Assembly: GCA_907165135.1 (NCBI GenBank) | Contig: OU015568.1 | Location: forward strand, 12,896,001-12,960,000 | Direction: 5' to 3' | From: Oikopleura dioica | Lineage: Eukaryota; Animalia; Chordata | DNA length: 64,000 nucleotides | Shown: positions 24,579 through 29,973 of the stretch, piece by piece | How the letters are laid out: each line of letters begins with the position of its first letter | Numbering within the stretch: the first letter of the stretch is position 1 | Program-made: the position numbers and the translations under genes | Notes under the pieces: generated by a model | Database searches by the model: none | What the model was told of the DNA's origin: nothing | Seen by the model: the letters and a program-made list of their open reading frames with translations, nothing else

Positions 24579-26024
24579 TCAGTAATATCGGTGAGCGAGC
24601 ATAATAGCGAATTCGCTCATTTCGGCCTTTGAGAAGCTATTCTTGTTGTTGTCGAAGTTGGCGTGAGAGCTGATCTCGTGGAAGCTGTTCATGTCCACAT
24701 TGAAGAGATATCGCAGGTTGTAGTACATGTCGAAGATCTCGGAGTGCTCAAGAACGTCTGAATAATTTCATTATCAGCTCCTAAGTTTTGTGATTTCTCA
24801 CCGTTGTGATCGGAATCGAAGATGTCGACGAGTGTGCTGCCGATGTTGGCATAGAAACCGGCAAAAGCCTGTTTGAATTCATCTTTGTCGAGGAGTTTGT
24901 CGTTGTTCTTGTCGAACTTGGCGAACTCATTGCTGATGAATCGGGGTGCGAATTTCGTGACTAAATATGAACCATGAAGATTTTTGGAGTTTCTCGAAAT
25001 TTTCAAATTTGATTTTGGTAAATGTAATCAAATCAAGACACAACATACATATGTACATATAAATATATGTACATATAATGTACATACAGAAGCTCGCATC
25101 TCTCCAGTGGCAGAAGTACATCATGTCTTGATCGATAGTCTTGCCATTGGCGCACTCGCGGAACGTCCTGGTGATCTCTTTGTCCCACTTTCCGTTCCAC
25201 TAAAATCATTATAATTTGAGAATAAAATTATCAAAAAGAAACTAACGGAAGAGAAGAGGCGCTCAGAGTTGTCAGATCGTCCGCTGTTCATCCAAAAATT
25301 GCTTTCGGTGACTTGATAGAGTTTGGACATGTCAGGATCGTGGTGAAATGAATCATGCTCATGCATTTCGTTGTTTCGGAAGTGATTGTCCCCTCGGTAC
25401 TGGTTTCTATTGAAATAAGAATCGCCCTGGTAATATTTGTTCTTGGGTCGGTAGCTGTCGTAATCCCGGTCGAAGTGGTTGAAAGAGTGTCGATCGTTGT
25501 ATCGCTTGAAATCGTTGAATCGGTACTTGTCAAATCCATATTGGTCCCGATCGTAAGAATGATCTCTTCTATGTTGATGGTGATCGTCGCTGTACTTCTG
25601 ATAAAACTTGGGGGAGTAGAAATCCGTCCGGTAGTCATCGTAGTGACGATTGCCAGAATATCTGTTGTTGTACGCATCCTTGTTCATTGGACCGTAGAAA
25701 TATCGGTCGCTGGAGTGTCGGTCGTTTTGGTAGTCCATTCGGTAGTCATCAAAATGACCGCCGTTGGAGTACCCGTAGCCGTTATTTCTATTGGAGTAGA
25801 AGCTTTTGTTCATCGGTCCGTAGAAGGGGCGATCGTTTGAGTATCTGTCATTTTGTCGCCACTATAAAAATAATTTATAATTCGCAAACAATTTATTTAA
25901 GCAGTTTTACCTGTCGATCGTAATCTTGGTCATAGATCTGTCGGTGATGATCAAATTGTCTATCAAAATCGTAGTATCGCTCGGCAACGCTAGCCCCAAT
26001 TAATCCTGCCGCTAAAAGCTTCAT
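24579..26024 (-). CDS. Secreted protein A: D/R/Y/H/N low-complexity domain + two EF-hands; 5 exons
   Basis: Signal MKLLAAGLIGASVA, about 210 aa aromatic/charged low-complexity region, WNGKWD...C...CHW module, EF loops DKNNDKLLDKDE and DSDHNDVLEHSE; all introns GT-AG. Confidence 0.88.
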
Positions 26025-26716: not shown

Positions 26717-27443
26717 TTAGTGATTTCTTCGAGATCGACGCTTGCTTTCTGCTCCTCGGGAATCTTCCAAATTGTCTGGGCCGGGCCGTTGCTTGATGAT
26801 GAACTTCTGGGTTCCTAAAAACAATGTTATTAATAAATCAACTTGATAAATATGATCTGAATTACCTCCGTATTGGAAGAGTTTGGCGGCGGTAACCTTG
26901 AGCCAGCGACGGTCCGGTTCGGAAGGGAAGAAGACGGAGTGGTCCTTGTTGACTTCATCGACGAAGAGTTTCGTCATCCATTTTTTGCTTCGTCCGTAGC
27001 CAGTCGTCTTGATTTTGCTCATCTGATGGATTTTCTCCTTGGTAACAACGCCTAGCTTCATAAGCTTTTTTTCGGCATCAACAAAGGAAAGTTCCATTCT
27101 TTCTCTTGGAGAATCGTCTTTGCTTTCAGGCTTCTCCGGGAAGCTGCCGAAGCCTATAATAATCCAATTAGTCCCGTTTTTCATGATAATGAGTTATTTA
27201 AATAAATATGTTGAATAATAGTGAGTTCTAATTACCGTATCGGAAGAGCTGCCTTGCCTCATGCTCGAGTCGGGTAGGATCTGGCTCGACAGAGAAGAAT
27301 TTGGAATAGTCTCTCTTCACTGCATCGACGAAGATTGTAGCCATATGCCGAAATCCTTTGCTTTTTGTCCTTTCAATTTGCTCTCTGGTCATTCTTCCGG
27401 CTTTGATAAGCCTTTCTTCAGCCCCAGCCTCGGAGAGATTCAT
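26717..27443 (-). CDS. Orphan protein with two tandem ~70-aa repeats; 3 exons
   Basis: Exon 1 LSEAGAEERLIKAGRMTREQI...FVDAVKRDYSKFFSVEPD...ARQLFRYG and exon 2 LSFVDAEKKLMKLGVVTKEKI...FVDEVNKDHSVFFPSEPD...AAKLFQYG; both are followed by phase-1 GTAATT introns. The start may lie upstream. Confidence 0.7.
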
Positions 27444-28473: not shown

Positions 28474-29973
28474 ATGAAACTCGAAGTCGCAACTTTAATC
28501 TCGGCAGCTGCTGCTCACGGAAACTTTTGGGGACATGGAGGTCAACACATGGTAAGATAAAACCTTGATTTCGATGTTTAATATCTGAATTCTAGTGGCG
28601 AGGAAACGGCTATTTCCCGATGAACAACCATTTCGACTTCTATCAGGGCAACAACTACAACCAGATGGGTCGCTTTTACGGCAATGACCGCTTTATGGAT
28701 TACTACAACCGATATGTAAGTCAATTTACGATAGAATTAATTCAGTCTTCTTTGATTTCTCCTCAAAAATGTTTTCAGTGGGGAAATAACCAAATGCGCC
28801 ACTCTTATAACCAGTGGTGGCCACAGAACTGGTTCGGCGGAAACAACCAGTGGAACATGAGCCCTGCTTACAACTTCTACGGAAACAACTGGATGGGACG
28901 ATCATTTTACGGAAACGATCGATTCTATGACAACCAGTACTCTCGAAACTTCTACGGCAACAACAATTACTGGATGAACAACAACTACCGTTACAACAAC
29001 CAGTGGATGGATCAATACAACTACCAAGGCAACTGGATGAACAACTACCGTTACGGCATGAGCCCAGCTTACAACTTCTACGGCAATAACTGGATGGGAC
29101 GATCCTTCTATGGAAACGACCGATTTTACGACAACCAGTTTTCTCGAAGCTTCTACGGTCATAACAACTACTACAACAACAACTACATGATGAACCGACA
29201 CTTTGATTCTCAGTTCTTCTATGGAAACAACTACCACCGATTCAACAACTACTACAACAACAACTGGATGAGCTTTGGAAACAGCTTCTACGGACAGGAT
29301 TCTTTCTTCCAAATGGCTGAGCAATTTTTCTGGCGAAACTCGGAATGGAACAGCGACAACGCCGACCGAGTTCTTCGATCGGTAATTGACCTTTTTCGAT
29401 GGTAAGACTAATCTTTCTCTAGTGGCAAGGAAAATGGGATCAGTCGATGTTTCACTCCTTCGAAATGTGCGGAAACGGCCAATACGTCGACTACCAGATG
29501 ATGGTTAACTGCCACTGGACTTCTGACTCGCACATGAACATGGACTTTTGTAAGTGATTTCTTTTATAAATTGAAATTTGGTGCTAACCTTTCATAATTT
29601 AGTCTCTCACTTTGCTCCTCGATACATCAGCATGCATTTCCAATACTTCGACATGAACCGAGACGGACGACTTAACCCAGAAGAGTTCCGACGTGCCTGG
29701 GCCGGATTCTTCTCCACTGTCGGTTCCACCATTGTTGACATGTTCGACCGAGATCACAACGGTAAACTTATGCAATTTCTCCTCCGTTAATTTTGTTCTC
29801 CAGACATGATCGACTCCTACGAGATGCATGATTTCCAGTATTACATGAACTACTTCTACCCATCATCTTTCCAACACTCCCAAATGAGCCGATTCTTCAA
29901 CAACCACATGTACTCTTTCTCTAAGTGGGACATGACCGAGTTCGCTCTCCAGAATACTAACCGATGGTGGTAA
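28474..29973 (+). CDS. Secreted protein B: N/Y/F/W/M/G low-complexity domain + two EF-hands; 6 exons
   Basis: Signal MKLEVATLISAAAA, N/Y-rich region, WQGKWD...C...CHW module, EF loops DMNRDGRLNPEE and DRDHNDMIDSYE; paralog of 24579-26024. Confidence 0.88.
28857..29171 (+). repeat. Internal 114-bp (38-codon) duplication in protein B
   Basis: Copies at 28857-28970 and 29058-29171 encode MSPAYNFYGNNWMGRSFYGNDRFYDNQ[YF]SR[NS]FYG[NH]NNY. Confidence 0.9.

What the first reader, a model, noticed from the sequence alone, without database searches (positions are those of the whole stretch)
28595..29320. Reflectin/prion-like composition of protein B
From MNNHFDF to DSFFQM (about 210 aa after removing one intron) I find no I, L, V, K, T, E or C. 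The region is built from N, Y, F, G, M, W, R, Q, D and S, e.g. NNQWMDQYNYQGNWMNNYRYGM. Cephalopod reflectins are known for Y/M/R/W/N/D richness with depletion of aliphatics and Lys; N/Q/Y-rich domains also typify prion-like functional amyloids. The canonical reflectin motif (M/F-D-X5 repeated) is absent, so this would be convergence. Possible optical (high refractive index) or amyloid-like structural role.
Basis: partly seen in the sequence, partly recalled or inferred. Interest (0 to 1): 0.7.

Follow-up and report, generated by a model that had tools for sequence, protein, structure and literature searches.

The report
Aromatic, asparagine-rich secreted calcium-binding protein
A gene of the planktonic tunicate Oikopleura dioica encodes a probably secreted calcium-binding protein whose 230-residue disordered half has almost no aliphatic or lysine residues; this reflectin-like make-up is real, conserved and independently evolved, but its function is untested.

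Summary
The window is Oikopleura dioica (Okinawa assembly, PAR). A six-exon gene on the + strand (28474-29973) has tiny GT-AG introns. Its spliced product is letter-for-letter the annotated 418-aa protein g12138 (P0001).

Residues 35-245 (211 aa) contain no C, E, I, K, L, T or V. They are 24% Asn, 31% aromatic and 7% Met. The region carries nine FYG motifs and one 67-aa tandem duplication.

The protein has three parts:
- a short probable signal peptide;
- this region, which AlphaFold leaves without structure;
- a confidently modelled C-terminal EF-hand domain of about 175 aa, with two canonical Ca2+ loops and two conserved cysteines.

All named relatives of the EF-hand domain are O. dioica proteins. 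Some are only signal peptide plus domain.

The gene sits head-to-head with paralog A, and the pair is duplicated 8.2 Mb away (as the scan's note s1-378178 on that other DNA had flagged). Between the two B copies the disordered region is under strong purifying selection (dN/dS about 0.07).

Even B's folded domain has swapped aliphatic residues for Phe and Met. Predicted refractive increment is 0.2125 ml/g, about 7.5 SD above the average protein.

There is no reflectin motif or homology. The resemblance is in composition only. The most likely role is a self-associating extracellular matrix protein. Optical, amyloid and adhesive roles remain open.

The parts
28474..28551 (+). Exon 1 of gene B (g12138): start codon, probable 14-16 aa signal peptide (MKLEVATLISAAAAHG), first residues of the low-complexity region
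   Evidence: GT-AG model; identical to P0001. The signal peptide is inferred from the hydrophobic N-terminus shared with paralogs A, P0008, P0087 and P0094.
28596..28715 (+). Exon 2: low-complexity region, residues 27-66
   Evidence: Invariant across the B-type proteins aligned. 90% identical to paralog B' while synonymous sites are saturated.
28779..29381 (+). Exon 3: the rest of the low-complexity region (to 29315, residue 245) and the first helices of the C-terminal domain
   Evidence: AlphaFold pLDDT is about 20 with no secondary structure up to residue 239.
28856..29186 (+). Tandem duplication of a 201-nt (67-aa) unit: copies 28856-28985 and 29057-29186, 84% identical over 130 nt
   Evidence: the repeat finder family D2. 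Exactly this 67-aa unit is missing from some MERC assemblies.
29423..29549 (+). Exon 4: degenerate first EF-hand-like motif carrying the two conserved cysteines
   Evidence: The short-strand/bridge signal of the structure model falls here.
29603..29761 (+). Exon 5: canonical EF-hand loop DMNRDGRLNPEE (29650-29685) and the start of the second loop (from 29746)
   Evidence: Pfam EF-hand_1/5/6 above curated cut-offs; loop pattern; 54% identical to the matching exon of paralog A.
29804..29973 (+). Exon 6: the end of the second canonical loop DRDHNDMIDSYE (to 29823), an aromatic/Met-rich last helix-loop-helix, and the stop codon
24579..26024 (-). Paralog A, head-to-head partner. Five exons (26024-25911, 25861-25247, 25199-25088, 24960-24802, 24757-24579), 392 aa. 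It has a signal peptide, a D/Y/R/N/H-rich region and the same EF-hand domain
   Evidence: Model; exon-by-exon similarity to B; the three introns bounding the C-terminal-domain exons have the same phases (0, 1, 1) in both genes.

Best explanation
Gene B encodes a probably secreted, calcium-binding, self-associating protein of an extracellular material, most plausibly the house or another apical matrix of Oikopleura.

Shown:
- The 418-aa product has a hydrophobic N-terminal leader.
- About 230 residues are predicted to be disordered. They are built from aromatic (Y, F, W), Met, Arg and Asn/Gln/Gly residues and have essentially no aliphatic, Lys or Glu residues.
- A folded C-terminal EF-hand domain carries two canonical Ca2+ loops and two conserved cysteines.
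- All named relatives of that domain are O. dioica proteins, and some consist of the domain alone.
- The disordered region is conserved at the residue level.
- The compositional shift extends into B's folded domain.

Inferred:
- The dense array of aromatic, Met and Arg 'sticker' residues, spaced by Asn and Gly, drives multivalent self-association (condensation or gelation). It may also bind polysaccharide.
- The Ca2+-loaded EF-hand domain, saturated in the secretory pathway and in sea water, acts as a stable folded handle for assembly or partner binding.
- Partner A, probably co-regulated from the shared upstream region, supplies a charged, His-rich counterpart.

The likeness to reflectins is convergent composition, not ancestry.
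For: - Gene model and identity with annotated g12138.
- Transcript-derived MERC proteins cross the same exon junctions.
- Composition, FYG motifs and net charge +4.
- AlphaFold gives pLDDT about 20 and no secondary structure for residues 1-239.
- The C-terminal domain models at pLDDT 80, pTM 0.80, with four helix-loop-helix units.
- Pfam EF-hand matches above cut-off and two canonical 12-residue loops.
- Family members consisting only of leader plus domain (P0008, P0087), or with an ordinary-composition N-terminal extension (P0090, P0094). All named members are O. dioica.
- B versus its paralog B' (L001): the low-complexity region has dS about 1.0, dN 0.075 and omega 0.07, as constrained as the EF-hand domain at 0.11.
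- Strong bias to C-ending codons (AAC 62 of 67 Asn codons, against 42% in other long ORFs of the window) hints at high expression.
- The head-to-head A/B pair is duplicated as a unit.
- Precedent for secreted prion-like or disordered proteins building a polysaccharide-based matrix: the C. elegans pharyngeal cuticle (PMC9629831, PMC4232772).
Against: - There is no localisation or expression-site data.
- The protein is not among the 80 catalogued oikosins. None of their domain schemes lists an EF-hand, and no oikosin-named protein appeared in the searches.
- Oikosins are described as highly glycosylated, whereas B has a single N-x-S/T sequon.
- The signal peptide is judged by eye, not by a predictor.
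- Self-association and polysaccharide binding are inferred from composition alone.
Confidence: 0.5

Rival explanations
1. Optical or dense-body role. The composition was selected for a bulk physical property, either high refractive index or high mass density. The protein fills refractile or dense particles, such as the luminescent house inclusion bodies or the statolith.
For: - Predicted dn/dc is 0.2125 ml/g for mature B and 0.2149 for the low-complexity part. The published human mean is 0.1899 (SD 0.0030) and the highest gamma-crystallin is 0.209.
- Predicted partial specific volume is 0.696, against 0.739 for an average protein.
- The shift reaches the folded domain. Of 28 positions that are I/L/V in the short paralog P0008, 14 are F or M in B and only 9 stay aliphatic. 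K falls from 6.7% to 1.2%.
- The literature describes comparable residue enrichment in lens crystallins (aromatic and sulphur residues, Lys replaced by Arg).
- Inclusion bodies occur in houses of luminescent Oikopleura species (PMC7921577).
Against: - There are no localisation data.
- The per-residue dn/dc and volume tables were recalled from memory. They reproduce the proteome mean (0.1902 against 0.1899), but the values are approximate.
- Aromatic and Met enrichment is equally expected for cohesive sticker-rich assembly domains, so the signature is not specific to optics.
- The house must stay transparent.
- My own knowledge, not checked here: O. dioica has no lens eye.
- Fold and profile searches give only generic EF-hand matches, with no specific link to Ca2+-regulated photoproteins.
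Confidence: 0.13
2. Functional amyloid. The N/Q/Y-rich, charge-poor region forms cross-beta fibrils outside the cell, as prion-like domains do.
For: N+Q are 31% and aromatics 31%. There is no K or E, and only three prolines in 211 residues. Secreted prion-like proteins that build a cuticle are known (PMC4232772).
Against: - AlphaFold predicts no strand, which is weak evidence.
- My own judgement, not tested here: the high W, F and Met content and the residue-level conservation (omega 0.07) are unlike drifting yeast-type prion domains, where composition rather than sequence is what matters.
- No PLAAC or PAPA score was computed here, because the score tables were not on hand.
Confidence: 0.1
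3. Adhesive or covalently cross-linked protein. Tyr is oxidised to DOPA or dityrosine by a tyrosinase or peroxidase, as in mussel foot protein 3 (my recollection: Y/N/G/R/W-rich), insect chorion or fluke eggshell proteins. This would harden or glue a secreted structure such as an egg envelope or a house seam.
For: Tyr is 16% of the region, with Gly, Asn, Arg and Trp. The protein is probably secreted. Partner A is Y/D/H/K/R-rich. An animal haem peroxidase domain is listed among the domains found in house proteins.
Against: The resemblance rests on composition recalled from memory. No modifying enzyme is linked to the locus, and the EF-hand domain has no counterpart in those proteins.
Confidence: 0.1
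4. Neutral low-complexity expansion. The region is a replication-slippage by-product with no function of its own, tolerated on an EF-hand protein.
For: One 67-aa tandem duplication and short AAC/TAC-rich repeats are present. Some assemblies differ in unit number.
Against: - Omega is 0.07 across 205 codons with dS about 1.
- Long invariant stretches are shared by all B-type sequences.
- Shannon entropy is 3.3 bits over 13 residue types, so this is not a simple repeat.
- The compositional shift also occurs in the non-repetitive folded domain.
Confidence: 0.03

Closest known systems
Cephalopod reflectins
   Same: Enriched in aromatic residues, Met and Arg. Devoid of Lys and aliphatic residues. 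Disordered. High predicted refractive increment.
   Different: No reflectin repeat motif and no N-terminal reflectin sequence, and no sequence hit. B has 24% Asn and a non-His net charge of only +4, whereas reflectins are described as having cationic linkers. B has a probable signal peptide and an EF-hand domain. Reflectins are intracellular (my own knowledge).
Secreted prion-like / disordered proteins of the C. elegans pharyngeal cuticle (ABU/PQN group; PMC4232772, PMC9629831)
   Same: Secreted, low-complexity and lineage-restricted. N/Q-rich prion-like composition. Thought to assemble an apical extracellular matrix around a polysaccharide.
   Different: No sequence relationship was tested or seen. 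Aromatic and Met content is far higher in B. B carries a folded Ca2+-binding domain. The matrix polysaccharide in Oikopleura would be cellulose, not chitin.
EF-hand superfamily, closest by profile to neuronal calcium sensor proteins (hippocalcin, neurocalcin)
   Same: The C-terminal domain has helix-loop-helix units and two canonical 12-residue loops. Profile E-value is 1.8e-8 to hippocalcin. Pfam EF-hand_1/5/6 score above cut-off.
   Different: Structural matches are only generic: Foldseek E-values no better than 4e-3 with TM no better than 0.38, and VIA Z no better than 6.7. B is probably secreted and has two conserved cysteines. It has extra N-terminal helices and no myristoylation motif. 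All named family members are O. dioica.
S100 fused-type proteins (profilaggrin, hornerin, trichohyalin)
   Same: The architecture is an EF-hand domain fused to a long low-complexity, assembly-prone region. The profilaggrin N-terminal domain appears among the generic structural matches (Z 4.7).
   Different: The EF-hand domain is N-terminal and of S100 type there. Those proteins are cytoplasmic and have a different composition (my recollection: G/S/H/R/Q-rich). There is no evidence of common descent.
Oikosins (Oikopleura house proteins)
   Same: Oikopleura-restricted, probably secreted, in multigene families, with signs of high expression.
   Different: B is not in the published list of 80. No oikosin scheme shows an EF-hand. 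B has only one N-glycosylation sequon.

Membership tests
Reflectin | Conserved reflectin repeat motifs, [M/F]-D-X5-M-D-X5-M-D-X3/4, and a conserved N-terminal motif | tested here: not met
   Neither the full pattern nor the half pattern occurs in P0001. No family match in Pfam even at E up to 10. The word-based protein search returned only Oikopleura-type proteins.
Reflectin | Composition: rich in aromatic residues, Met and Arg; devoid of Lys and aliphatic residues | tested here: met
   Residues 35-245 have 31% F+Y+W, 7.1% M, 6.6% R and no K, I, L or V. Definition taken from PMC11927725.
Reflectin | Intracellular protein of cephalopod iridocytes and leucophores | tested here: not met
   The organism is the tunicate Oikopleura dioica. 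The N-terminus looks like a signal peptide, which is an inference.
Prion-like (yeast-type) domain | Long N/Q-rich, charge-poor, disordered region | tested here: met
   N+Q are 31%, the only charged residues are 14 R and 10 D, and pLDDT is about 20.
Prion-like (yeast-type) domain | Formation of self-templating cross-beta aggregates | not testable with these tools
   This needs thioflavin-T, fibre diffraction or seeding assays. No PLAAC or PAPA score was computed.
EF-hand superfamily | Helix-loop-helix with a 12-residue Ca2+-binding loop: D at position 1, D/N/S at 3 and 5, E/D at 12 | tested here: met
   The loops are DMNRDGRLNPEE (residues 326-337) and DRDHNDMIDSYE (358-369). Pfam EF-hand_1 scores 27.2 bits against a cut-off of 25.4. 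The model has four helix-loop-helix units. Ca2+ binding itself was not measured.
Oikosin (house protein) | Detected in the house proteome and expressed in the oikoplastic epithelium | not testable with these tools
B is not in the published accession list or domain schemes. That study used the Norwegian gene models, and no B-type protein with a Norwegian (CBY) accession appeared in my searches.
Ca2+-regulated photoprotein (aequorin/obelin type) | Specific sequence and fold similarity to photoproteins beyond generic EF-hands | tested here: not met
   Obelin, mitrocomin and clytin appear only as weak generic hits: TM 0.38 and E-values from 6e-5 to 0.2. They rank below neuronal calcium sensors. 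No photoprotein is in the top 50 of the VIA wide search.

The most novel reading that the evidence does not exclude
B (with its partner A and the duplicated pair) is a secreted, Ca2+-binding protein whose whole sequence has been selected for a bulk physical property, either very high refractive increment or very high density. The selection includes the hydrophobic core of a folded EF-hand domain. That would make it an extracellular, tunicate counterpart of reflectins and crystallins, filling refractile or dense particles such as the luminescent house inclusion bodies or the statolith.
Probability: 0.13. Interest if true: 0.8.

Novelty: new variant of a known kind. Interest (0 to 1): 0.5.

Why it matters
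If the protein assembles as proposed, it would be a compact natural example of a sticker-rich disordered domain coupled to a Ca2+-binding fold and working outside the cell. It would also be a new, uncatalogued component of larvacean extracellular materials.

The compositional shift reaches the core of a folded EF-hand domain: aliphatic residues are replaced by Phe and Met, and Lys is lost. The region is also under strong sequence-level constraint. Together these facts argue that composition itself was selected. The predicted refractive increment exceeds that of fish gamma-M crystallin. This makes a convergent 'reflectin-like' solution directly testable in a tractable chordate model, and it offers a new sequence template for high-index or condensate-forming biomaterials.

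Tried and rejected
- Reflectin homology: rejected. No motif, no Pfam hit and no sequence hit.
- Photoprotein kinship of the EF-hand domain (prompted by luminescent house inclusions): only generic EF-hand similarity.
- Known oikosin: no EF-hand oikosin in the text or supplements of Hosp et al. 2012, and no oikosin-named hit.
- Simple tandem-repeat artefact: Tandem Repeats Finder sees only two tiny AAC-rich arrays. The region is a 13-letter, 3.3-bit sequence with one 67-aa duplication.
- Structure for the low-complexity part: AlphaFold on 16 B-type sequences gave pLDDT about 20. That shallow, near-identical alignment also degraded the C-terminal domain, so only one search is used for the domain.
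- ESM Atlas look-alikes: the low-complexity part gave no usable hit and the domain gave only generic EF-hand clusters.
- The Zhao, Brown and Schuck 2011 paper with the per-residue refractive table is not held. The table was used from memory and checked only against the published proteome mean.
- Statolith literature search: nothing relevant.
- Joined spliced model: it was never typed into or sent to a search tool. Exons were searched by reference. Full-length searches used the database protein P0001, which is identical to the model. Exons were concatenated only inside scripts, for frame, composition and codon statistics.

Full report
**What is there.** The window comes from Oikopleura dioica, Okinawa assembly OKI2018_I69, pseudo-autosomal region. 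Around the finding lies a six-exon gene on the + strand. Its exons are 28474-28551, 28596-28715, 28779-29381, 29423-29549, 29603-29761 and 29804-29973. The five GT-AG introns are 41-63 nt long. The spliced translation is 418 aa and is identical, letter for letter, to the annotated protein g12138.t1 (P0001). B-type MERC proteins include P0002, and the MERC members listed carry sequencing-run identifiers (ERR1711893, ERR1712035). From my own knowledge, MERC is a protein-level assembly of Tara Oceans metatranscriptomes. P0002 crosses the first three exon junctions with no intron-coded residues. The mRNA is therefore made and spliced as modelled.

**Check of the observation.** Residues 35-245 (211 aa; 28620-29315 minus the 63-nt intron) contain no C, E, I, K, L, T or V. 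The longest run free of these residues is residues 10-246. Composition is N 24%, Y 16%, F 10%, G 9%, M 7%, Q 7%, R 7%, S 6%, W 5% and D 5%, plus 5 H, 3 P and 2 A. Aromatics total 31% and Shannon entropy is 3.3 bits. With average residue frequencies the chance of such an absence is about 1e-50.
- This is not a simple repeat. Tandem Repeats Finder reports only two tiny arrays.
- There are nine FYG motifs, mostly FYGN[ND].
- One 201-nt (67-aa) tandem duplication is present, 28856-28985 against 29057-29186, 84% identical.
- The reflectin repeat pattern is absent.
- Net charge of the region is +4, with 5 His. The whole protein has a single N-x-S/T sequon despite 67 Asn.

**Architecture.** The N-terminus (MKLEVATLISAAAAHG) looks like a short signal peptide. 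The same kind of leader opens paralog A and the family members P0008, P0087 and P0094. This is an inference, because no signal-peptide predictor was available.
- AlphaFold on 16 B-type sequences gives pLDDT about 20 and no secondary structure for residues 1-239. The ESM Atlas record for the whole protein has mean pLDDT 0.50.
- The last 175 or so residues, modelled with a family alignment, give pLDDT 80 and pTM 0.80. The model has N-terminal helices followed by four helix-loop-helix units, each marked by a short strand or bridge.
- Pfam finds EF-hand_1/5/6 above the curated cut-offs.
- Two loops are canonical: DMNRDGRLNPEE at residues 326-337 and DRDHNDMIDSYE at 358-369.
- The first motif is degenerate and carries two cysteines. 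These are conserved in A, B, P0008 and P0013, which suggests a disulfide.
- Structure and profile comparisons give only generic EF-hand matches. Foldseek's best E-value is 4e-3 with TM no better than 0.38. The best VIA Z is 6.7. The profile against PDB sequences is best for hippocalcin at 1.8e-8.

**Family and locus.** An exhaustive HMMER search of 1.84 billion representatives with the C-terminal domain found only a handful of true relatives, plus generic multi-EF-hand proteins. A profile search found more. Every relative that carries a name is from O. dioica. The rest are unnamed marine metagenome or transcript fragments.
- One group is leader plus domain only: P0008, P0087 and P0088, about 210 aa.
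- A second group has an N-terminal extension of ordinary composition: P0013, P0090 and P0094, 319-366 aa.
- The A and B types have the low-complexity extension.

Paralog A lies head-to-head on the - strand (24579-26024; five exons; 392 aa). The three introns bounding its C-terminal-domain exons have the same phases as in B. Its EF-hand exon is 54% identical to B's. Its extension is D/Y/R/N/H-rich and highly charged (33 basic, 35 acidic and 16 His residues in 206). The A/B pair is duplicated 8.24 Mb away, as note s1-378178 flagged: g9707 (P0076) and an A-like partner lie in locus L001. DNA identity there is 78% over the B gene, and the intergenic spacer is 0.7 kb, against 2.45 kb in the window.

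**Constraint.** Between B and B', 205 aligned codons of the low-complexity region give dS about 1.0, dN 0.075 and omega 0.07. The EF-hand domain gives omega 0.11. Long stretches of the region are invariant in all B-type sequences. The exact sequence is therefore maintained, not merely the composition. Some MERC assemblies lack exactly the 67-aa unit. This may be real copy-number variation or a collapse during assembly. B uses AAC for 62 of 67 Asn codons, and C-ending codons generally. Other long ORFs of the window use AAC for 42% of Asn codons. This is a hint of high expression, no more than that.

**A protein-wide compositional shift.** The bias is not confined to the disordered part.

| Measure | B's folded domain | Short paralog P0008 |
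|---|---|---|
| I+L+V | 6.4% | 17% |
| K | 1.2% | 6.7% |
| F+Y+W | 22.5% | 12% |
| M | 8.7% | 3.1% |

At the 28 aligned positions where P0008 has I, L or V, B has F at 7 and M at 7, and keeps an aliphatic residue at only 9.

I calculated refractive increments from per-residue values recalled from Zhao, Brown and Schuck 2011. That paper is not held. The recalled table reproduces the proteome mean: 0.1902 against the published 0.1899.

| Protein or part | Predicted dn/dc (ml/g) |
|---|---|
| B, low-complexity part | 0.2149 |
| B, mature protein | 0.2125 |
| B, folded domain | 0.2087 |
| A, mature protein | 0.2055 |
| P0008 | 0.1953 |
| P0094 | 0.1907 |

Published benchmarks are a human mean of 0.1899 (SD 0.0030), beta-gamma-crystallins at 0.1999 and the highest gamma-M crystallin at 0.209 (PMC4047532). 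Predicted partial specific volume is 0.696 for B and 0.700 for A, against 0.739 for average composition (that table is also from memory).

**Interpretation.** 'Convergent' is the correct word. What the protein does is not shown by any result here. I commit to the following as most likely (about 0.5). It is a secreted, Ca2+-loaded protein that self-associates through its dense array of aromatic, Met and Arg stickers spaced by Asn and Gly. It contributes to an extracellular material, probably together with its charged partner A. The house is the obvious candidate, given the biology of the animal, the lineage restriction, the family expansion and the signs of high expression.

Against this reading, B is not among the catalogued oikosins. 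None of them has an EF-hand. B is also nearly free of N-glycosylation sequons. That catalogue was built on Norwegian gene models, and no B-type protein with a Norwegian accession appeared in my searches.

The bulk-property reading (optical or dense particles) gains real but non-specific support from the dn/dc, the density and the remodelling of the folded core. I give it about 0.13. Functional amyloid and oxidative cross-linking or adhesion get about 0.1 each. Neutral low-complexity drift is essentially excluded by omega 0.07.

**Comparison with known things.** The protein is a member of the EF-hand superfamily: the defining loop and fold were tested and met. It is not a reflectin, because the motif test failed. 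It is not a recognisable photoprotein and not a listed oikosin. The closest functional analogues are secreted prion-like or disordered matrix proteins such as those of the nematode pharyngeal cuticle (PMC9629831, PMC4232772). In architecture it resembles the S100 fused-type proteins. I rate it a new variant of a known kind: a lineage-specific secreted EF-hand family that acquired extreme, reflectin-like low-complexity extensions.

Noticed in passing
window 26720-27184 and 27231-27443, - strand: Two open reading frames lie in the 2.45-kb spacer between genes A and B. They share a module of about 75 aa (40% identity, E 5e-16) and have no Pfam match. The paralogous locus L001 has only a 0.7-kb spacer, so this looks like an inserted or additional gene of unknown kind.
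   Followed up: partly
window 24579-26024, - strand (paralog A): A's extension is a His-rich polyampholyte (33 R+K, 35 D+E and 16 H in 206 aa, 15% Tyr) with almost no aliphatic residues. It also has a high predicted dn/dc (0.2055) and a low partial specific volume (0.700). This is the charged counterpart of B's nearly neutral region.
   Followed up: partly
window 28856-29186; proteins P0003, P0005, P0006: Some transcript-derived assemblies lack exactly the 67-aa duplicated unit. This may be real copy-number variation between alleles or lineages, or a repeat collapse during protein-level assembly.
   Followed up: no
L001 6117-7297 (-) and 8001-9483 (+): A second head-to-head A'/B' pair lies 8.24 Mb away on the same chromosome (g9707 = P0076). 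Its DNA is 78% identical over the B gene. The annotated P0076 stops at SKWDMT, short of the C-terminal residues seen in B, so its 3' end may be mis-annotated.
   Followed up: partly
protein P0007 (Logan, 188 aa): This database 'protein' is a read-through of genomic DNA. It translates the introns on either side of B-type exon 5 together with exons 5 and 6, so it is an artefact of gene calling on an unspliced contig.
   Followed up: no
protein cluster P0032 (18 members, ENA contigs): This is a possible distant relative of the family domain (E 3e-5). It is about 135 aa, has the two cysteines and two EF loops, and its source organism is unknown. It could show whether the family exists outside O. 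dioica.
   Followed up: no
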